Virus record (IMG/VR): IMGVR_UViG_3300017963_000192
Location: 124,001-188,000 of that record
Reading direction: 5' to 3' (one strand)
Length of the DNA: 64,000 nucleotides
Of this stretch, positions 1 through 22,971 are shown piece after piece. The position numbers and the translations under genes were made by a program. The stretch's first letter is position 1. The number at the start of each line of letters is the position of its first letter. Below the pieces are notes generated by a model. It searched no databases and was not told the origin of the DNA. It saw only the letters and a program-made list of their open reading frames with translations.

Positions 1-60
1 AAATTTTCTTAATATTTTGATAATCTAGGTCATTTTTTGCCTCCTTAACTTATAAGGTTC

Positions 61-89
61 AATTTATTATAAAAGTTACAGTTTGTCAA
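61..89 (-). promoter_or_regulatory. sigma70-like promoter firing out of the left window edge
   Basis: TTGACA (89-84), 17 nt, TAAATT (66-61); AAGGAGG RBS at 46-40. Confidence 0.5.
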
Positions 90-90
90 T

Positions 91-125
91 AAAAAAACCC
101 TTCTAAAAATAAGGAGGGTTTTTTT
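91..125 (-). terminator. intrinsic terminator closing the RNA array (possibly bidirectional)
   Basis: A7-CCCTTCT..AGGAGGG-T7 hairpin flanked by A and T runs, just downstream of the last pentamer tract. Confidence 0.75.
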
Positions 126-223
126 ATTGGTTTTCTGTTCAATTCTGCTCAATTCTTATCTCTTCTGTTCAGTTCTCGTCATATCTTTTCAGCTCTTGCC
201 ACCTCACTTCTTTTAACTAATTT

Positions 224-270
224 GACCAGCTAAGTAATGAACTTAGAAAACTTCTTTAAAAGTTCTGGTC
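224..270 (-). repeat. tRNA-like separator repeat (copy 4)
   Basis: GACCAG-AACUUU uaaa GAAGUU-uu-CUAAG uucauua CUUAG-CUGGUC. Confidence 0.8.
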
Positions 271-363
271 TTTTCTACTCTTAACTTCTCAGATCTAAAC
301 TATTCAAATCTCGTCTACTCTTAACTTGCCTGATCTAGTCTGTTCCTATCTTATAACTAATTT

Positions 364-410
364 GGGCAGTTAGGTAACGAACCTAATTAATTTCTTTAAA
401 AATTCTGCCC
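364..410 (-). repeat. tRNA-like separator repeat (copy 3)
   Basis: GGGCAG-AAUUUU uaaa GAAAUU-aa-UUAGG uucguua CCUAA-CUGCCC. Confidence 0.8.
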
Positions 411-518
411 TCCTCTGTTCTGGACAATTCTTTTCTTTCCTATTCTTTACTCATCAAAACTATCCTACTCTACTCATGTCTGCTCTTTTCTTCTCTCCTC
501 TTTCCATTTAACTAATTA

Positions 519-565
519 GGGCAGCCAAGTAATGAACTTGAACAATTCCTTTAAGAATTCTGCCC
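519..565 (-). repeat. tRNA-like separator repeat (copy 2)
   Basis: GGGCAG-AAUUCU uaaa GGAAUU-gu-UCAAG uucauua CUUGG-CUGCCC. Confidence 0.8.
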
Positions 566-704
566 TCTTTGCTATTCTTGTCTTCTCAGATCTAAACTAT
601 TCAATTCTCGTCTATTCTTAACTTGCCTGATCTAACCTGATCTTATCTTATAACTAATTTGGGCAGTGGAGGATTAGAACCTCCACTAACAAACCAAAGT
701 TATA

Positions 705-1448
705 TTAACCAACCTTTGCCCAATTCTTATCTTTGATAACTGGATTAAATGGTTCAATGGTGTCTGATGCAACAATGCCTTTAATTGAATATGTTCCATA
801 TGTTCCAGAATTTTCCGGTCTCCAGGCACCGTATCCAGATAATGCTCCAGCTTTTACTATTATCTCAGTCATTTGTTCTGGACTAATAACGTTTTCATCA
901 AAAGCAACTCTTAAATTTAAAGTCCAATCAGAAAACATTGCTCTGTAAAAAGGCACCAAACTCCCTTTCTTACCACCGAGATTTCCAAGTTCAATGCTTT
1001 TATCGTACTTTTTATATTTAATTGGAATTAAACCTCTCCTTGCTGTAGGAACTACAAAAATAGCCGCCTCTAATGCTTTTTTCATTTTTCTTCCTAGGAG
1101 ATTTTGACCAACATTTACAAACGATTTTTTAAATCCTATTGCAGGTACTCCTACTAAACCTTTTTTTTCATCGAGCCAATGAGCCTTTCCTTTACATTCC
1201 TCATCAGGGTCAACTGCTTTGGTTCTTTTAAGGATTTTATTTTTTTCTTTTTCAAAATCTTCTCTTCGCTCTTTTAAAAGATTTTTTGATTTTGCGTTTT
1301 GAAGAAGCTCTGTTTGCCCTTCAATAACAAACTCAATCCACGAAATAAATCGAGATGGCTCTATAATATTTAGATTATCTTTTACAGAGCCTCCCTTTTT
1401 TTCTGCTTTTTTGCCTAATTCTTGTACACTATCCTTTTTCTTTGGCAT
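705..1448 (-). CDS. stand-alone Cas7/RAMP-like RNA-binding protein (Vipr-like)
   Basis: RAMP-style motifs: N-terminal strand IEGQTELLQN, GVPAIGFKKS (cf. IPgsslKG), YRAMFSDW, Gly-rich loop GALSGYGAWRPENSGTYGTY; GAGG RBS. Confidence 0.75.
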   Translation of the reverse strand: MPKKKDSVQELGKKAEKKGGSVKDNLNIIEPSRFISWIEFVIEGQTELLQNAKSKNLLKERREDFEKEKNKILKRTKAVDPDEECKGKAHWLDEKKGLVGVPAIGFKKSFVNVGQNLLGRKMKKALEAAIFVVPTARRGLIPIKYKKYDKSIELGNLGGKKGSLVPFYRAMFSDWTLNLRVAFDENVISPEQMTEIIVKAGALSGYGAWRPENSGTYGTYSIKGIVASDTIEPFNPVIKDKNWAKVG

Positions 1449-1474
1449 AATTAATTCCTCCTGCTAATTTAATA

Positions 1475-2101
1475 TTAAATCAAAGGCTCATATTCATTCA
1501 CAATTTCTTGTAAAATACTAATCACCTTTTTTAATCTTTTTTCTATTGCTATAAAATGTAAATTTGCTTCACAATCATTTATAAGTGCTTTAGCTAATTT
1601 AACATATTGTAATGCTTGTTTCTTATCATCTATAATTATATCCGATAAATATTGAATCCTTTTATATTTTTTGTTAGATGTTGTTTTTACTCCATGAGAG
1701 CTATATTGAACAGGTATCTCTTTAAGAGAGTGTTTTATTATTTTATTGGCTGGTGCTTTTATTCTTGGTATAGGAACAAATGTAATAGACCTTTCTAATT
1801 GAGATATTTCTCTTGAAACATAAAGCAAATGCCCTTTCTTTTTATCCATAGTTAGAAGCTTGTGTATTTCTCTAAAATTATTAGAATCATATTGCTTTAT
1901 TAACATCTTTGCTATTTCTTTTGTAGTTTCTGCTCCAGTTTCATTTAAAAATTTGTAATAATCTTCTATACAAAGATTTTCATCAATATTTTTGCTTATC
2001 GCTTTTTTATGAAAAAAACTTTCTTCTTTGAACTTCCAACTTTTAATTTCGATTCCAATGTCATTTAGTTCTTTTTTTATAGACGATGTAAACTTAACCA
2101 T
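1475..2101 (-). CDS. conserved phage protein, putative partner of the Cas7-like protein
   Basis: co-oriented 26 nt upstream of the RAMP gene; IHKLLTMDKKKGHLLY..ISQLERSI resembles the LHxxFEWDDxxAAxxYRxxQARxLIRSI family I recall beside such genes. Confidence 0.55.
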   Translation of the reverse strand: MVKFTSSIKKELNDIGIEIKSWKFKEESFFHKKAISKNIDENLCIEDYYKFLNETGAETTKEIAKMLIKQYDSNNFREIHKLLTMDKKKGHLLYVSREISQLERSITFVPIPRIKAPANKIIKHSLKEIPVQYSSHGVKTTSNKKYKRIQYLSDIIIDDKKQALQYVKLAKALINDCEANLHFIAIEKRLKKVISILQEIVNEYEPLI

Positions 2102-2123
2102 TAATTGTCCCCTAATATAATGT

Positions 2124-2160
2124 GTACATTAAATATACATTACTATTATCCAATAGTCAA
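2124..2160 (-). promoter_or_regulatory. sigma70-like promoter for the RAMP operon
   Basis: TTGACT (2160-2155), 17 nt, TATATT (2137-2132); shares 20 nt with the promoter at 6926-6962. Confidence 0.7.
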
Positions 2161-2178
2161 GTATTTTTTAAAAAAATT

Positions 2179-2246
2179 AAAAACCACCTTCTTATAAGAG
2201 GGTGTTTTTTTAACTAAAAAAACCCCCCTGTTTCCAGAGGGGTTTT
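2179..2246 (-). terminator. tandem intrinsic terminators after the major capsid gene
   Basis: two GC hairpins (CACCTTCTTATAAGAGGGTG; CCCCCCTG..CAGAGGGG), each with an A-run on the + strand. Confidence 0.7.
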
Positions 2247-2277
2247 GTTAAAGACTAAATTATATCGTAGTTAGAAT

Positions 2278-3444
2278 TTATGAACTCATCCAGCCAGGTA
2301 TAGTAGCTGAAGATTTAACAGCACACGCAACCGAACGTGGGTTAACAATTACTTGACTGATTTGCTCAAGGAATAACCATCCATAGGCTGGCTGGTTAAA
2401 CACGAACATATCAGCAGGAAGTACTGTAAGCTCTACCCTTATAGGCATTGCTCCAAGATATCTTCCTTCTGTAACAGCGAAGATAACGCCTTCAGGAACT
2501 GAAACGTTTTCAATTCCAGCTTCGTCAACACCCGCAGTTACGAATATGTTAACGCCCCAAATACTTCCAAAAATACCTGTTAAGAGAAGATCTCTTGAGG
2601 TAATTGGATCGTAATCGATTGCGTTGATGTTTTTCTTCAAGTCACCAAGTTCCGCCCTATTCATAATGAACTTGTCAACAAGTAATCTGTGTCTTTCAAC
2701 TTCGTATTGAAGTGTTTCAAGAACAGATTTGCTTATTGTTGAAGTAACATTAATCTGTGAGTTCTCAAGCGTAGATGCTTGGTAAAGCTCTTTAAGACCA
2801 TTTCTATCTTCTTTCAGCATAATCTGAAAGGTGGTCTTGTCGTGTGTTCTGTCTACGATGTCATACTGTCTTTGTGCTATCTCTGAGATAGTGATGATTG
2901 GTCGTGCAGTTACTAAGAATTCAGGTGGGAAAATCCTGTTTCCTTTAACTACAGTCTCAACTGTCTGACCATCTTCTTGGATAATAAGAGCAGTAACGTT
3001 TACGTCTTTTTCATAGGAGTTAATCTGACCTTGTGCCAGATTGTGAGTCCTATATACCTGTCTGATGAATCCTTCATAGTCTAGTCTATCAAGGATGAGT
3101 GGAATCATCTCTGCTCCAAATCGTAGCCTTTCAGCTTCGTCTGCCGCAAATACAGACTCAACGATTCTTTGCTTTTCTTCTGGAGTGTAAAAAGATTGTG
3201 CTTGTTTTCCTGGTCTCTGATACTGTGCTCGAAGTCCTGCGAACTTCATTTGCTGGTTTATTAAGTCTTGGTGATCATACGCATTAAGATTGCCTTTTGA
3301 GTCAAACATGTCTTCCTTGGATTCTACAAGTCTTCCGGCAGAGTTTTGTCCACCAAAAGATTTAGGGTTTAACAGCCTTTCGTCATATTTCTTTGCTATT
3401 GCAGCAGTTTTGACAGTTTTCTTTTCCATTTTTTCAGCCCACAT
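2278..3444 (-). CDS. major capsid protein (HK97 fold)
   Basis: 388 aa; PLILDRLDYEGFIRQV, RTHDKTTFQIMLKED, GIFGSIWGVNIFV, GWLFLEQISQVIVNPRSV; last gene of scaffold-decoration-capsid block; strong GGAGG RBS. Confidence 0.85.
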   Translation of the reverse strand: MWAEKMEKKTVKTAAIAKKYDERLLNPKSFGGQNSAGRLVESKEDMFDSKGNLNAYDHQDLINQQMKFAGLRAQYQRPGKQAQSFYTPEEKQRIVESVFAADEAERLRFGAEMIPLILDRLDYEGFIRQVYRTHNLAQGQINSYEKDVNVTALIIQEDGQTVETVVKGNRIFPPEFLVTARPIITISEIAQRQYDIVDRTHDKTTFQIMLKEDRNGLKELYQASTLENSQINVTSTISKSVLETLQYEVERHRLLVDKFIMNRAELGDLKKNINAIDYDPITSRDLLLTGIFGSIWGVNIFVTAGVDEAGIENVSVPEGVIFAVTEGRYLGAMPIRVELTVLPADMFVFNQPAYGWLFLEQISQVIVNPRSVACAVKSSATIPGWMSS

Positions 3445-3454
3445 AGTAGCCTCC

Positions 3455-4153
3455 TTATGATAATCTCATTTGAAATTGAAGTTCAGGATCGTTGGCTGAT
3501 GGAACCTTTGTTACGAATCCTATTGTGACACCAGTGCCACCTATAGTTGGAAGACCGTTTGCACTAACTGTAACTGCTGCATTTAATGCCCAAGCAGCGT
3601 CAGTTTCATAAGCCAATGTAGCAATCTCACCAGAACCTTCAATAATCGCAGCACGACCACTACCAAGAGTCTGATCTATTCCTGTTAGATTAGGATCTTG
3701 ATATCTATAGTCAATTAATACAGTTTCAGTTGCACCGATACTTGAACCACCTCCAGCGTGGGTAATTATACCATTAGTTGCATTAACAGTATAGTCAGTA
3801 GTTACGGTGTAAGCGGTTCCATCAGAATCTGTTACTCTAACTGATGCACTTTGGATATTTGCGTTATTCAAAGTTATTGTTGTACCAGAACCTGTAAATG
3901 TTCCACTTTCATCAATCACAGGACGATAGAAACTAGTAGTCTTGTGGCAGAAAAACATACCAATAATTTTAATGTCGGCTGTGTTATCTGCAACTTTAGC
4001 TAGTCCAGTAGTTCCATCAAGAGTTGCAATATAACCTGCAATGAAGTCCGCAGAAGAATCTACGTCTCTCCATCCAGATATTATGTTGCCGCTCAGTTTA
4101 CGAACAGAATTAACAATTCCATTCCTCCCGATTGGGGGCAATACTGTACTCAT
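3455..4153 (-). CDS. head decoration/cement protein with inserted beta-rich domain
   Basis: between scaffold and capsid; Gly/Thr rich; DQTLGSGRAAI, IGFVTKVPS; insert TTDYTVNATNGIIT. Confidence 0.65.
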   Translation of the reverse strand: MSTVLPPIGRNGIVNSVRKLSGNIISGWRDVDSSADFIAGYIATLDGTTGLAKVADNTADIKIIGMFFCHKTTSFYRPVIDESGTFTGSGTTITLNNANIQSASVRVTDSDGTAYTVTTDYTVNATNGIITHAGGGSSIGATETVLIDYRYQDPNLTGIDQTLGSGRAAIIEGSGEIATLAYETDAAWALNAAVTVSANGLPTIGGTGVTIGFVTKVPSANDPELQFQMRLS

Positions 4154-4178
4154 AATTGCCGTTCCTCCTTACGATTGA

Positions 4179-6212
4179 TTAGTATCCTCGCCTTTCACGG
4201 GATACATCTTCCCAATATTTACGAAATTCCTCTCTTCGATCTTTGCTTGCTTGAGTACCTCTAAGAGGAGCAGTGTCTTTTTCTTCAACACTCGCTGTTT
4301 TATCTCTCGAACTTTCCTCTGAAGATTCCTTTACAGGTTCCTGAGTTCCATCTTTTATTGTATAGTCCTGTACGAACTTTGCAATCTTTGTAAATTCGTG
4401 AATATCTTTTTCCATAAATGTCTCAAAAGCTTCTTTCATAATCAATTTCTGATTATCTTCATAACCATCTATAAATGAATTATGAGCAATAGCTTCAGCA
4501 GCCTCTTTCTCAATACCATACTCGACAAGATTAGTAATCATTGCCTCTTTAAGAGGACAATCAAGTATGCCTTTCAATTGCTGAAGTGATGCCAATTCAA
4601 CAGCGAGCTTTGCTTTATTAACATTGTTTTCAACGCTGTGCTGTCTAATTCTCTCAGCAACTTCTACAGAAACTTTTCCTTTCTGTGCTTTAAGATTAGA
4701 ATCAAGACCATCTGGATGAATAGTTGGAGCTAACTTATCCTTTGCAGGTTGTTGCTTAATCTCCTTATTAATTTCATTAGCTTGATCTTTTGCAGTCTGT
4801 GCGTTAATAGGATCTTGGTTTTGCTTGTTTAAATCCTTAAAAGGATATAGCTGTGCTTCCTTTTTCATTTCTGATAACCTCGTTTTTATTTTGTCGATTA
4901 CATTAGAAGCCGTAATCTCCGAAATTTCATCTTCAGAAGCTTTCTTTTTCTCTTTCTTTTCACTCTTTGATCCTTTCTCTCCTGTTGTTACTTTCATAGC
5001 ATCATCACTCCCCTTTCCTCTAGTAATGTTTCCTGGAGTACCGGCAGTACCTTCTTTTGTCTCCTCATCATCGTCACTTTTTTCTCCGCACTCGTCATCA
5101 TCTTCTTCCGCTTGCTTAACAACCTCAGTTTCTTTACTGGCAACAGCTTCCGGTTTCTTGTCTTCTTCTTTGTCTTCTTTCTTTTCGAAAGGACTCTTTG
5201 ACTTTTCTAAAGTACCTTTGCCTTTGTCCATTTCACCTTCAAGATCATCGAAATCTTTTTTAGGAATACCTGCGTCTCCTTTAAGACCTTCGCCTTTCTC
5301 AAGCCAATCTACAAGCTCTTGAATTGCGTCTTTTAATTTACTTATGATTCCTTCTAATCCGCCACCTGCTGGTTTAATGTCTGCGATTCCACCTGGCTCG
5401 CCCATACCCAGCGCGTCAAGACCAGCTAGTCTTATACGAGTATCATTGTACTTTTTTAAAAGAGCTTCAACTCTTCTTCTAGACGATGATAGTCCCTCGA
5501 CCACACTAGAAACATCAGTAGCTTCTTTGAGTTCTAAAACTCCATCCTTTAGTTGAACTTTTCTCATTAGAACACTCCTTTTAGTATTTTGGTTTGAACT
5601 TTCCTTTGGCGGGTTTACACCCGTTGTATCGTTGTCTGGTTTTTTAGCTAATTGAGTAGGTTGGGGTGTTCCGACCGATTGACTAGTGGGAGGTAGTTGT
5701 GTAGGTTTTCCTACATCAACTCCGACTAACGACTGATCTTCCTTTTCTTCTTCAGGTTTTTTCATTAAAACATCTTTGAATAATTGCTGAACGTCTTCTA
5801 CGTCCCTATAATCAATTAAATCTTGAATTCGATCAGTTCTCCAACCTTCTTCTATTAAAGTATCTAGCAATGAATCTAGATCTTCTATTTCATCTCTTTT
5901 AACTATCTTATTAATATCTTTTCTTAAACTTGACAAAGAGTCATCGTTTAATTGTTCTTCTGGCGATTTTTGAGGAACTGCTCCTGGTACGGGAGGTTTA
6001 GCTCCAGTTCCAGGGGGTGCTCCTACTCCACCTAAAGGAGGTGCTCCAGCTTGACCCGTAGGTTTAACTTGCTTTCCTCCGCCTTGTTGTGCTGGAGGTC
6101 CTAGCTTATTAGGGTCAGGAGGAGTCTTGCTCCCTTCTCCTTGTGTTGGTGTATGTAAAGAGGGCAATTCAGTTAAATTCGGATTACCCGCACTATCCAT
6201 TGTTTCAGGCAT
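4179..6212 (-). CDS. putative head scaffolding/core protein
   Basis: 677 aa; Pro/Gly-rich N-terminus, acidic/Lys-rich coiled segments, many KxA motifs; position upstream of capsid. Confidence 0.6.
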   Translation of the reverse strand: MPETMDSAGNPNLTELPSLHTPTQGEGSKTPPDPNKLGPPAQQGGGKQVKPTGQAGAPPLGGVGAPPGTGAKPPVPGAVPQKSPEEQLNDDSLSSLRKDINKIVKRDEIEDLDSLLDTLIEEGWRTDRIQDLIDYRDVEDVQQLFKDVLMKKPEEEKEDQSLVGVDVGKPTQLPPTSQSVGTPQPTQLAKKPDNDTTGVNPPKESSNQNTKRSVLMRKVQLKDGVLELKEATDVSSVVEGLSSSRRRVEALLKKYNDTRIRLAGLDALGMGEPGGIADIKPAGGGLEGIISKLKDAIQELVDWLEKGEGLKGDAGIPKKDFDDLEGEMDKGKGTLEKSKSPFEKKEDKEEDKKPEAVASKETEVVKQAEEDDDECGEKSDDDEETKEGTAGTPGNITRGKGSDDAMKVTTGEKGSKSEKKEKKKASEDEISEITASNVIDKIKTRLSEMKKEAQLYPFKDLNKQNQDPINAQTAKDQANEINKEIKQQPAKDKLAPTIHPDGLDSNLKAQKGKVSVEVAERIRQHSVENNVNKAKLAVELASLQQLKGILDCPLKEAMITNLVEYGIEKEAAEAIAHNSFIDGYEDNQKLIMKEAFETFMEKDIHEFTKIAKFVQDYTIKDGTQEPVKESSEESSRDKTASVEEKDTAPLRGTQASKDRREEFRKYWEDVSRERRGY

Positions 6213-20462: not shown

Positions 20463-20577
20463 TTCGCTTCTCCTTATACGAGATTCTTTTTACCTTATAA
20501 ATTATAAGAAGAAATGTTTGAATTTTAAGTGATGATTATTGATTTTAATTAATTAATACATAAAAAATAATGAAGCA

Positions 20578-20614
20578 AAAAAAATCCTTGAGGGGCGACT
20601 CCCAAGGATTTTTT
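20578..20614 (-). terminator. intrinsic terminator downstream of HTH gene
   Basis: AAAAATCCTTG..CAAGGATTTTT hairpin. Confidence 0.65.
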
Positions 20615-20703
20615 AGAGGATTTAACACCTTCTTATTAAGTCATTTAATAAAAGTAGGTTAAGGTTGCACCTTAAATAATATATGCTTATTGTCAATAAA
20701 AAT

Positions 20704-21294
20704 TCAAAATGAACTGAATAAAAATTTTTCTTCTTCAAGAATTTTAGGAATGTCTGGTAAATCTACTACAATATCTTTGTATCTTGGATTTTCAATGTTA
20801 TCTTTTATTTTATTAACAACATTCTTCTTGTCTCTAGGATCGATTAACCCTTTATATTCTGAAATCAGATTTAATAATCTCTTTCTTCGTATCAATACTA
20901 TTAAAGTATTCATAAATGTTGAGTCCGGTAATGGGTTTAGGTTGACTTTATATAAATTATTTTTAAATTTTCTTTTAATTCTACTAATTAATCGTACTTT
21001 CTCTAATTCTTCAATTCTTCGTATCTGTGTTCTAATAGATGTTCCTAAAGATTTAGAAATATAATCCAAAGAAACATTAATCTCATCTTTTCCTGTTTTT
21101 GATTGACTAAATTGAGCCATTTCTTTAAGAAAATAGTAAGTTTCCTTTTCTTTAGGAGAAATAATCTTATATCCAAGAAGAACATAAGAGTTCATTTGAC
21201 CTATTTCTATAATAGGGTGCTCCTTTAAAAGGATTTGAAGTCTTTTTAGTTGAGATTCTTTAGACAATAAGAACCATTGATTGTTTTTATCCAT
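20704..21294 (-). CDS. winged-HTH replication-initiator-like protein (paralog 1)
   Basis: SPKEKETYYFL..VSLDYISKSLGTSIRTQIRRIEELEKVRLI..NLYKV; start MDKNN with GGAG RBS; adjacent to iterons. Confidence 0.65.
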   Translation of the reverse strand: MDKNNQWFLLSKESQLKRLQILLKEHPIIEIGQMNSYVLLGYKIISPKEKETYYFLKEMAQFSQSKTGKDEINVSLDYISKSLGTSIRTQIRRIEELEKVRLISRIKRKFKNNLYKVNLNPLPDSTFMNTLIVLIRRKRLLNLISEYKGLIDPRDKKNVVNKIKDNIENPRYKDIVVDLPDIPKILEEEKFLFSSF

Positions 21295-21396
21295 AAGACG
21301 CTCCGATATCATCAAAATAGAGAAAAATAGAGAAACTTTAACACACAATATAATAACCTTTTATTAAAAAGGATATTTTGTCAATAAAAAAACAGA

Positions 21397-21580
21397 GTGA
21401 CAGTTCTGTCACCTATGAAGTGACAGTTCTGTCACCTATAGAGTGACAAGGTTGTCACTCTATAGAGTGACAAGGTTGTCACTACAGGCAAAAGTCCCAC
21501 TTTCCCCCGTAGTGACAGTTTTGTCACAAAAATGCCGATTTTTGAAGTCCCACTTTCCCCCGTAGTGACAGAACTGTCAC
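21397..21580. repeat. six palindromic GTGACA-N4-TGTCAC repeats plus a 27-nt direct repeat; probable replication origin or parS-like site
   Basis: copies start at 21397, 21420, 21443, 21467, 21512, 21565; AAGTCCCACTTTCCCCCGTAGTGACAG at 21492 and 21545; AT-rich flank; at the strand switch. Confidence 0.8.
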
Positions 21581-21780
21581 TCTATTATTATCTGATATAT
21601 AAGAATATTATTAGTTGATATATGCAAAAATTTTTTAGGGGGGAAATTTTAAGATAGGGAAAGAAAAGAAAAAAACCATCTTAAAACTTTCTTATAAAAA
21701 AAAGATTGCAAAAAAACCCGCCCCCTTGTATGTTGTCCATACGACATAGTTATTAAAATAAAGTTTATGGAGGTGAAAAA

Positions 21781-21978
21781 GTGAAAGTAAGTGATTCCTC
21801 TCAAAAGGAATACAAAACAGGGATTCATGTAACTTTGCCATTGTCTCTTGTTGAGAGAATGGACATGTTTTTAATGAACTCTAAAGAGGCTAGTACAAGA
21901 AGTTCGTTACTAGCAGATATATTATCAACATTTTTAGATAATGTTGATAATAAAAATGATGAGATTAAACAATATTAA
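21781..21978 (+). CDS. ribbon-helix-helix (CopG-like) regulator
   Basis: IHVTLPLSLVERMD..TRSSLLADIL; GGAGGT RBS. Confidence 0.7.
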   Translation: MKVSDSSQKEYKTGIHVTLPLSLVERMDMFLMNSKEASTRSSLLADILSTFLDNVDNKNDEIKQY

Positions 21979-21996
21979 ATTAAAGGAGGTTTAAAG

Positions 21997-22971
21997 ATGG
22001 AAGTGATTAATGTTTCTATTAAAAAAATCAAACCTGATCCAAATCAGCCAAGAAAGAGATTCGATGTTGATGCTCTAGAAAGGTTGAGACTCTCTGTTAA
22101 AGATGTTGGAGTGGAGCACCCAATATTAATAAGGGAGAACGGATCTGGTTACACTATTATTGACGGAGAAAGGAGATGGAAAGTTTCTAATGAATTGAAT
22201 TTAAAAACAATTCCAGGTATAGTTGTAGATACGGACAGTGCTCTCGAAGTACAGTTACGTTCAGATTGTTTGAAAGAGGGTTTAAACGTTGACGAAAAGG
22301 ACAAAGCAATTTATCTGTATTACCAACATTGGAACCCTAAAACAAAAACTATACAAAAAGAAAAAAGTGTGGATACTAGTATCCACCCTAATACATTTAG
22401 AGAAATTTCTCGTAGACTTGGTTTATCTAAAGATAGGGTTTTAATTGCGATAGATAGGTTTGAATTGAAAAATAATGATCCAGAATTTATTGAAGAGGTT
22501 GATAAAAAGTACAACCCAAAAAGCAAAAGCTCTTTTGGTACGGTTGATTCTACTATAGCAATGACAAGGGCTTTAAAAGATAAGCCAAAAGTTAGGAAGG
22601 AGCTAATTAAAGATACACTTGAGAGAAAAAAAACAGGCATTTCTAAAAATGCCGAAGTTAAAGATACTATTAAAAGATTAAAAGATCTTGAGGAGGATGA
22701 TGTTGATACTGCAAAGAAAATTCTTAAAGCGGAAAAGGCTAAAGACATGCCTGATGTTAATGTTGTTTTTAAGCGGTATGTAGATAAATACAATTCTCTA
22801 AACGTTGATTTTATGAGTAAGAACTTTGGTAAAGTTAAGGAACACATTAACGATAGTAATGTCCTAAAATTGATGAGGTTATTTGAAGAGGTTATACAAG
22901 ACGTTACTGGAAGAAAATTCATCTTTAAAGAGGCGGATTCAAATAAAGATAGAATTAAAAAATTAACATGA
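21997..22971 (+). CDS. parB: ParB/Srx-domain protein
   Basis: IKPDPNQPRKRFD, PILIR, IIDGERRW. Confidence 0.85.
   Translation: MEVINVSIKKIKPDPNQPRKRFDVDALERLRLSVKDVGVEHPILIRENGSGYTIIDGERRWKVSNELNLKTIPGIVVDTDSALEVQLRSDCLKEGLNVDEKDKAIYLYYQHWNPKTKTIQKEKSVDTSIHPNTFREISRRLGLSKDRVLIAIDRFELKNNDPEFIEEVDKKYNPKSKSSFGTVDSTIAMTRALKDKPKVRKELIKDTLERKKTGISKNAEVKDTIKRLKDLEEDDVDTAKKILKAEKAKDMPDVNVVFKRYVDKYNSLNVDFMSKNFGKVKEHINDSNVLKLMRLFEEVIQDVTGRKFIFKEADSNKDRIKKLT

What the first reader, a model, noticed from the sequence alone, without database searches (positions are those of the whole stretch)
1475..2101. Uncharacterised partner gene of the RAMP-like protein
First gene of the operon, with no recognisable nuclease motif. 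It resembles, from memory, a helical phage family often found beside lone Cas7-like genes, but is highly diverged (the usual EWDD appears as TMDK). It is a candidate accessory, capping or effector subunit.
Basis: inference. Interest (0 to 1): 0.6.

Follow-up and report, generated by a model that had tools for sequence, protein, structure and literature searches.

The report
Accessory gene of a phage VIPR system
The 208-residue gene is the conserved helper gene of a VIPR system, a recently described RNA-guided gene-silencing system that phages use against rival mobile elements; here it sits in a jumbo phage, in a diverged form with an unusual guide-RNA repeat.

Summary
The ORF at 1475-2101 (- strand, 208 aa) is a real gene. 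It follows the capsid gene's terminators and a sigma-70-like promoter, so it starts its own operon.

The 247-aa "RAMP-like" neighbour is a Vipr protein: it matches the solved SUSP1 Vipr (E 1e-6) and belongs to a family of more than 450 proteins. Directly after it lie four guide-RNA units. Each has 16-21 five-base AGA/NN repeats and a three-helix tail supported by covariation. The locus is therefore a VIPR system, a kind first described in 2026 preprints.

The 208-aa gene holds the place of the vipr-accessory (vap) gene. Only two true homologues exist in public data. The one with DNA lies directly upstream of a vipr orthologue and the same type of array, in a related jumbo phage but about 136 kb from that phage's capsid gene. 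Nineteen other relatives lack the cassette beside their capsid gene.

Profile comparison aligns EWDD with TMDK, suggestively but not conclusively.

Fold and biochemical role remain unknown. The protein is basic and helical and has no enzyme motif. I read it as a non-catalytic nucleic-acid-binding or filament-binding helper. It is a new variant of a known kind.

The parts
2185..2246 (-). Two intrinsic-terminator hairpins ending the capsid-gene transcript (2246-2219 and 2204-2185); they isolate the cassette from upstream transcription
2132..2160 (-). Sigma-70-like promoter TTGACT-17 nt-TATATT. A similar TTGACG-17-TATATA precedes the orthologous cassette in L005.
1475..2101 (-). The finding: 208-aa gene (P0001), candidate vipr-accessory (Vap-type) protein. 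It is basic (pI 9.4, net +11) and predicted mostly alpha-helical. Conserved motif H80-x-L-L-T-M-D-K-x-K-G; TMDK is at 1852-1841.
705..1448 (-). vipr gene, 247 aa (P0005): Vipr-family RAMP with a Lys-rich N-terminal extension of about 35 aa. The C-terminal motifs YR..F.DW, FDE and G.G.WRP..SG.YGTY are conserved.
661..721 (-). First tail-like structured element (T0). It overlaps the vipr stop codon and has the same closing stem, GGGCA/TGCCC.
518..659 (-). vrRNA unit 1 (approximate limits): linker AATTAGTTATA, 17 AGA/NN pentamers, then the three-helix tail at 565-519
363..517 (-). vrRNA unit 2: 19-21 pentamers, tail at 410-364
223..362 (-). vrRNA unit 3: 16-17 pentamers, tail at 270-224; guide 90% identical to unit 1
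132..222 (-). vrRNA unit 4: 16 [AT]G-A-NN pentamers with no three-helix tail; it runs into the terminator
85..131 (.). Bidirectional intrinsic terminator closing the cassette

Best explanation
The 208-aa ORF is the accessory (Vap-type) gene of a VIPR system carried as a mobile cassette by a jumbo phage. One promoter drives, in order, the 208-aa gene, vipr and a four-unit vrRNA array, and a terminator closes the unit.

By analogy with the published SUSP1 system, Vipr protomers polymerise along each vrRNA. They hold the constant trinucleotide of each pentamer (here AGA rather than GGY) and expose the NN dinucleotides. The NN positions read a gapped DNA target and silence a rival mobile element.

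The 208-aa protein is basic, mostly helical and has no enzyme motif. It most likely helps this step without catalysis, by binding nucleic acid or the filament at the target. It would then be needed for full silencing, as Vap1 is in SUSP1. It is probably a very diverged relative of the HPLH-x-RFEWD family (phrog_15946) that accompanies vipr in actinophages and a cyanophage.

Shown here: the gene is real; the operon signals; the neighbour is a Vipr; the array and its structured tails; the conserved order and joint relocation of the three parts. Inferred: the helper role, nucleic-acid binding and the remote homology.
For: The neighbour is a Vipr.
- phmmer against the PDB hits 36pp 'SUSP1 Vipr protein', E 9.7e-7.
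- It matches phrog_4652 at E 3e-15 over residues 38-223.
- A profile that includes it retrieves 452 family members.

The guide array is real.
- The only 5-nt periodic AG tracts in the 64-kb window lie at 648-262, right after vipr. None was found in about 170 kb and about 103 kb of other phage DNA. A Felixounavirus control shows GGYNN tracts flanking its vipr.
- The tails form three helices: 97% of cells paired, 12 of 17 pairs with compensatory changes, 0 of 500 shuffles as good.

The three parts are linked.
- P0002 (42% identity) lies directly before a vipr orthologue (50% identity) and two AGA/NN vrRNAs with the same tail.
- These are the only genes shared between that 20-kb locus and the window.
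- That phage's capsid protein is 85% identical to ours, but its cassette lies about 136 kb from the capsid gene.
- Nineteen relatives show no 208-aa gene or vipr in the 0.3-3 kb held downstream of their capsid gene. Seven of them reach the conserved 304-aa gene 0.5-2.4 kb on, against 3.7 kb in our phage.

The family link is suggestive.
- hhalign of A1 against phrog_15946-type Vaps scores 23.5, P 0.006, over 103 columns. H80/H36, [LF]83/F39, [MW]85/W41 and D86/D42 are aligned.
- 0 of 400 column shuffles reach that score (mean 11, maximum 18). Reversed and unrelated real alignments score 10-15.

Literature.
- VIPR loci typically hold vipr plus one vap. Vaps of types II, VI and VII are predicted DNA binders (10.64898/2026.04.26.720920).
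- Deleting vap1 costs SUSP1 a 10^4-fold drop in plaquing on satellite lysogens (10.64898/2026.10.15.759431).
Against: - No direct evidence of interaction or function exists.
- HMMER-level searches find no similarity to any Vap, including SUSP1 Vap1. The hhalign probability is only 6%.
- The synteny rests on two loci from related phages (capsid protein 85% identical).
- The gene is upstream of vipr. The phrog_15946 and Vap1 genes are downstream.
- The vipr orthologue next to P0002 carries an in-frame TAA, so that cassette may be decaying while its 208-like gene stays intact.
- The AlphaFold models are of low confidence (pLDDT 43 and 51), so 'helical, DNA-binding' is weakly based.
- No natural target of the vrRNAs was found.
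Confidence: 0.65

Rival explanations
1. It is an integral or assembly subunit of the ribonucleoprotein rather than a target-side helper. It would recognise the three-helix tail, process or load the array transcript, or cap one end of the Vipr filament.
For: It is co-transcribed with vipr and the array. The tail fold is specific to this clade and the 208-aa family is restricted to the same clade. The array must be cut into units, and no ribozyme or Rfam element was seen between units.
Against: In SUSP1, Vipr and vrRNA alone form the RNP and silence reporters without Vap (10.64898/2026.04.26.720920). The protein has no RNase or RAMP features.
Confidence: 0.12
2. It is a local transcription regulator (a repressor or activator of the cassette promoter). 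It is co-inherited with the cassette but does not act with Vipr at targets.
For: The protein is basic and helical, with an HTH-like run of short helices at residues 60-102. Other vipr loci carry small HTH genes directly upstream (Ecliptus gp18 matches HTH_3 at E 4e-7; L033, L034). The L005 cassette has an extra 53-aa ORF at its head.
Against: No HTH family is matched. At 208 aa with conserved N- and C-terminal blocks, it is larger than a simple repressor.
Confidence: 0.12
3. It is an unrelated cargo gene that merely travels in the same variable slot.
For: The slot downstream of the capsid gene is a hotspot with different cargo in relatives; for example, an unrelated 206-aa ORF occupies it in L042.
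Against: Order and spacing before vipr are the same in a second phage at another genome position. There are shared promoter and terminator boundaries and no internal terminator.
Confidence: 0.06
4. It is a self-protection or anti-VIPR factor. It would shield the phage's own genome or cassette from rival vrRNAs, or inhibit rival Vipr filaments.
For: VIPR loci and solo vrRNAs are reported to target each other (10.64898/2026.10.15.759431). The cassette proteins diverge fast (42-50% identity) beside a capsid protein at 85%.
Against: There is no similarity to known anti-defence proteins. Its position as the first gene of the same operon is equally expected for a helper.
Confidence: 0.05

Closest known systems
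VIPR systems, type II (Escherichia phage SUSP1 / Pseudomonas fulva prophage): vipr + vap1 + vrRNAs (bioRxiv 10.64898/2026.04.26.720920, .720927, 2026.10.15.759431)
   Same: It shares a lone Vipr RAMP gene, one small accessory gene in the same operon, an adjacent array of vrRNAs built from 5-nt repeats followed by a structured 3' tail, and a phage-encoded, minimal locus.
   Different: The accessory gene is upstream of vipr, not downstream, is 208 aa rather than 146, and has no detectable similarity to Vap1/phrog_5926. The repeats are AGA/NN rather than GGY/NN, with 16-21 units rather than 9-16. The tail is a three-helix junction, whereas the SUSP1 clade has a pseudoknot. Vipr has a Lys-rich N-terminal extension. 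The host phage is a jumbo phage of 218-235 kb.
phrog_15946 family (HPLH-x-RFEWD[DN]): Gordonia phage Ecliptus gp20, UmaThurman gp41, Mycobacterium phage Quico gp58, Cyanophage Cy-LDV1 g33
   Same: These are small proteins of unknown function encoded next to vipr (7 of 7 loci checked). The profile-profile match is colinear over about 100 columns and places EWD[DN] on TMDK.
   Different: They are about 140 aa against 208 aa; the query has about 50 extra N-terminal residues. They lie downstream of vipr. HMMER finds no match between the two. hhalign probability is only 6%.
Non-canonical VIPR arrays (GAC/NN, CAC/NN, WGT/NN, TGH/NN) reported from a genomic language model (bioRxiv 10.64898/2026.10.21.760802)
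   Same: Both have a 5-nt period, a fixed trinucleotide other than GGY, and a Vipr-like fold encoded nearby.
   Different: AGA/NN (strictly [AT]G-A/NN) is not among the motifs named in that text. Their arrays repeat about 10 times; ours repeat 16-21 times. No accessory gene is described there.
Non-RAMP subunits of class 1 CRISPR effectors (Cas11 / Cas8-type helical subunits)
   Same: Both are helical, non-catalytic proteins encoded beside RAMP genes that polymerise on a guide RNA.
   Different: No sequence or fold similarity was detected. This is an analogy only.

Membership tests
VIPR system (locus level) | A gene of the Vipr RAMP family | tested here: met
   PDB 36pp SUSP1 Vipr at E 9.7e-7. 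phrog_4652 at E 3e-15. The query keeps all nine invariant residues of a 91-sequence family alignment.
VIPR system (locus level) | Adjacent vrRNA(s): tandem 5-nt repeats with a fixed trinucleotide and a variable NN | tested here: met
   Four tracts of 16-21 pentamers, [AT]G-A-NN, lie at 659-132. They are the only such tracts in 64 kb. The trinucleotide is AGA, not the canonical GGY.
VIPR system (locus level) | Invariable structured 3' tail after each repeat tract | tested here: met
   Six tails from two phages: 17 pairs, 97% paired, 12 with compensatory changes, 0 of 500 shuffles as good. Unit 4 lacks the tail.
VIPR system (locus level) | vrRNAs are expressed and form an RNP with Vipr that silences DNA matching the 1-nt-skip code | not testable with these tools
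   This needs sRNA-seq, pull-down and reporter assays. The computational target search found nothing.
Vap (vipr-accessory protein, generic) | Conserved co-location with vipr across independent loci | tested here: met
   Both loci with DNA have the same order; in the second phage the cassette sits at another genome position. With n = 2 and related phages, the support is limited.
Vap (vipr-accessory protein, generic) | Contributes to VIPR function (as Vap1 does in SUSP1) | not testable with these tools
   Genetic or biochemical assay required.
phrog_15946 (HPLH-x-RFEWD) Vap family | Significant match to the family HMM | tested here: not met
   The PHROGs scan gave no hit at E <= 1. hmmsearch of an A1 profile against family members gave none.
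phrog_15946 (HPLH-x-RFEWD) Vap family | Profile-profile similarity and the core motif H-x2-F-E-W-D | tested here: inconclusive
   hhalign score 23.5, P 0.006, probability 6%, 103 columns. 0 of 400 shuffles reach it; controls score 10-15. The motif is kept as H-x2-[LF]-T-[MW]-D.
Vap1 of SUSP1-type VIPR (phrog_5926) | Sequence or profile similarity to Vap1 | tested here: not met
   hhalign probability 0.1, score 10.3.
RAMP / Cas5-6-7 (a second RAMP subunit) | RRM-type beta-alpha fold with a G-rich loop | tested here: not met
   The protein is predicted to be almost all-helical and has no G-loop. The models are of low confidence.
Nuclease or helicase Vaps (VIPR types III-V) | HNH or other nuclease domain, or a helicase domain | tested here: not met
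   No such domain in Pfam, NCBIfam or PADLOC.

The most novel reading that the evidence does not exclude
The 208-aa protein is a true second subunit of the effector, specific to the AGA/NN-code, three-helix-tail clade of VIPR. It would bind the tail or cap the Vipr filament. This would make the system a two-protein RNA-guided complex, an intermediate between single-protein VIPR filaments and multi-subunit Cascade-like effectors.
Probability: 0.15. Interest if true: 0.75.

Novelty: new variant of a known kind. Interest (0 to 1): 0.5.

Why it matters
VIPR systems were described only in 2026, and the role of their accessory (vap) genes is an explicit open question in those papers.

This locus offers a compact natural variant for study. 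It differs in the fixed trinucleotide (AGA), the guide length, the tail fold, and an accessory gene that sequence searches cannot place.

If the link to phrog_15946 holds, one ancient Vap lineage would join actinophage, cyanophage and jumbo-phage VIPRs. The pair would help in finding which residues matter (H-x2-[FL]-x-[WM]-D).

If the link does not hold, this is a further Vap class.

In either case the cassette is small enough (about 2.1 kb) to test directly in a reporter system.

Tried and rejected
Homologue searches for the 208-aa protein
- tblastn against 50,697 phage records: no match.
- Word-indexed search of 5.8 billion proteins: only itself.
- phmmer against 1.84 billion representatives: two true homologues. 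The third hit, P0003, is a 2,774-aa Cna-B-type repeat protein whose score comes from 13 tiny repeated stretches; I rejected it as spurious.
- Scans of IMG/VR, JGI metagenomes and GTDB genomes with the family alignment: only the same two phages.
- A scan with the Vipr clade alignment: the same two phages.

Structure
- AlphaFold2 on the full length (pLDDT 43) and on residues 1-130 (pLDDT 51) gave models too weak to use.
- VIA-align's best match was Z 4.5 (generic helical repeats). Foldseek gave E > 3. I treated both as no information.

Co-fold
- The 208-aa protein with Vipr returned 'no answer' (ipSAE 0.00). This counts neither for nor against binding.

Other tests
- A DNA-motif scan for the tail end (CTGCCCAAATTAGNTA) gave 17 extra loci. 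None has periodic tracts, so they are chance matches.
- Target search: there are no self-targets under skip rules 0-2. Three exact 11-unit 1-nt-skip patterns found nothing in IMG/VR.
- Rfam found only terminator look-alikes. ARAGORN found no tRNA, although the first tail has a T-arm-like hairpin.
- My first idea, from the position after the capsid gene, was a head or connector structural protein. I dropped it because relatives lack the gene at that position.
- VIPR type assignment and naming as vap1-6 could not be done. The papers' supplementary data are not held.

Full report
**Observation**

The ORF at 1475-2101 (- strand) encodes 208 aa. A good Shine-Dalgarno sequence (AGGGGA, 2113-2108) precedes the ATG.

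Upstream, the 388-aa gene at 2278-3444 is the major head protein (phrog_2522, E 5e-53; best GenBank relatives are jumbo phages). Two terminator hairpins follow it (2246-2219 and 2204-2185). Then comes a TTGACT-17-TATATT promoter at 2160-2132.

The next gene (705-1448, 247 aa) begins 26 nt after its stop, with no terminator between. The TMDK motif is residues 84-87.

No Pfam, PHROGs, NCBIfam, PADLOC or PDB-sequence match is significant.

**What the neighbour is**

The 247-aa protein matches phrog_4652 (E 3e-15). It has weak tblastn hits to about 193-aa Felixounavirus proteins that lie near the DNA polymerase gene. Decisively, it matches PDB 36pp, 'SUSP1 Vipr protein' (E 9.7e-7).

[quoted passage not shown] In these systems:
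- Vipr polymerises on vrRNAs made of GGY/NN pentamers plus a structured tail.
- It reads DNA by a gapped code and silences rival mobile elements.
- Loci typically hold vipr plus one vipr-accessory gene (vap1-6).

A profile that includes our protein retrieves 452 family members. Our protein keeps every invariant residue of a 91-sequence alignment.

**The guide array**

A noncoding stretch of about 600 nt lies directly after vipr and ends in a bidirectional terminator (85-131).
- A scan for dinucleotides at a 5-nt period found AG tracts only at 648-262 in the whole 64-kb window.
- It found none in about 170 kb of unrelated viral contigs and none in about 103 kb from relatives' capsid regions.
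- In a Felixounavirus control it recovered GGYNN tracts on both sides of vipr.

In register, the tracts are 17, 19-21, 16-17 and 16 pentamers of [AT]G-A-NN. Three of them end in a 47-nt tail.

Six tails from two phages fit one three-helix structure: 97% of cells paired, 12 of 17 pairs with compensatory changes, 0 of 500 shuffles as good, and slid controls collapse.

This is a VIPR locus with a non-canonical fixed trinucleotide. Other non-canonical motifs have been reported (10.64898/2026.10.21.760802), but AGA/NN is not named in that text.

**Is the 208-aa gene a partner?**

Exhaustive phmmer found only two true homologues, P0002 (214 aa, 42%) and P0004 (213 aa, 34%).

P0002 lies on a 252,876-bp phage contig. 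There it is followed after 37 nt by a vipr orthologue (50% identity), then by a tail element and two 11-unit AGA/NN vrRNAs with the same tail. These are the only genes that the 20-kb locus shares with the window.

That phage is a relative: its capsid protein is 85% identical. Yet its cassette lies about 136 kb from the capsid gene.

In 19 relatives (capsid protein 37-86% identical) neither the 208-aa gene nor vipr appears in the 0.3-3 kb held downstream of the capsid gene. Seven of them show a variable slot of 0.5-2.4 kb before the conserved 304-aa gene. Our phage has 3.7 kb there, including the cassette.

So the promoter, 208-aa gene, vipr and array move together as one accessory module. They diverge much faster than the core genome. 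The DNA of P0004's 1-kb contig was not available.

**The 'EWDD' family**

About 140-aa proteins next to vipr carry HPLH-x-RFEWD[DN] and belong to phrog_15946. They occur in:
- Gordonia phages Ecliptus and UmaThurman;
- Mycobacterium phage Quico;
- Cyanophage Cy-LDV1;
- two metagenomic contigs.

A Vipr HMM confirms the neighbour in every case. In Mycobacterium phage Gorge the two are fused in gp54.

HMMER sees no link between this family and the 208-aa family. hhalign of the two alignments scores 23.5 (P 0.006, 103 columns).

No column-shuffled alignment reached this score (0 of 400; mean 11, maximum 18). Reversed and unrelated real alignments score 10-15.

I take this as suggestive remote homology, with a probability of about 0.6. 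Neither family resembles SUSP1 Vap1.

**What the protein is like**

It is basic (pI 9.4, net +11) and predicted mostly helical. It has a moderately confident four-helix core at residues 41-102 and two long C-terminal helices. The models are too weak for fold assignment.

**Mechanism and verdict**

The best reading (0.65) is a non-catalytic Vap-type helper that acts with the Vipr-vrRNA filament at the DNA target. This parallels Vap1, which SUSP1 needs to resist its satellite.

The rivals are:
- an RNP assembly or capping subunit;
- a cassette regulator;
- a passenger gene;
- an anti-VIPR factor.

The system is a new variant of a known, very recent kind. The accessory protein's biochemical role remains open.

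Noticed in passing
window 85-721 (- strand): A four-unit vrRNA array with AGA/NN pentamers instead of GGY/NN, 16-21 units each, and three-helix tails with strong covariation. Unit 4 lacks a tail and runs into the terminator. A tail-like element (T0) overlaps the vipr stop codon.
   Followed up: yes
window 518-659 and 223-362: The guides of vrRNA units 1 and 3 are about 90% identical over 102 nt (a duplicated guide). They presumably aim at the same or allelic targets.
   Followed up: partly
L005 10926-10928 (also L006): The vipr orthologue in the related 252,876-bp phage carries one in-frame TAA at codon 82. It is identical in contigs from two samples. It may be a nonsense mutation (a decaying cassette), read-through, or two-piece expression. 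The 208-like gene beside it is intact.
   Followed up: partly
L035 1212-2429 (Mycobacterium phage Gorge gp54): This 405-aa ORF joins the N-terminal two thirds of a Vipr (HMM positions 3-132, no G-loop) to a complete phrog_15946 domain. It is either a natural fusion or a deletion-fusion of vipr and its accessory gene.
   Followed up: partly
window 1343-1448 (Vipr residues 1-35): Vipr of this clade has a Lys-rich N-terminal extension of about 35 residues. The typical Viprs of about 205 aa lack it; the L005 orthologue has it.
   Followed up: no
window 1-3444 and L003 9824-13573; L042-L059: The slot between the major capsid gene and a conserved 304-aa gene is a variable cargo hotspot in this phage group. 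It spans 0.5-2.4 kb in relatives (an unrelated 206-aa and a 360-aa ORF in L042). Here it spans 3.7 kb and holds the VIPR cassette, a 144-aa ORF and a 238-aa nucleotidyltransferase-like gene.
   Followed up: partly
L005 9843-10004: An extra 53-aa ORF overlaps the start of the 208-like gene by 4 nt (ATGA) at the head of the orthologous cassette. Our phage has no counterpart.
   Followed up: no
window 3455-6212: A 232-aa protein with an Ig-like segment (phrog_807-like; duplicated in some relatives) and a 677-aa highly charged, low-complexity protein precede the capsid gene. They are likely a decoration protein and a scaffold protein.
   Followed up: no
window ~20500-22000: GC skew and AT skew change sign, and the coding strand switches from - to +. 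This marks a divergent transcription point of the jumbo phage genome.
   Followed up: no
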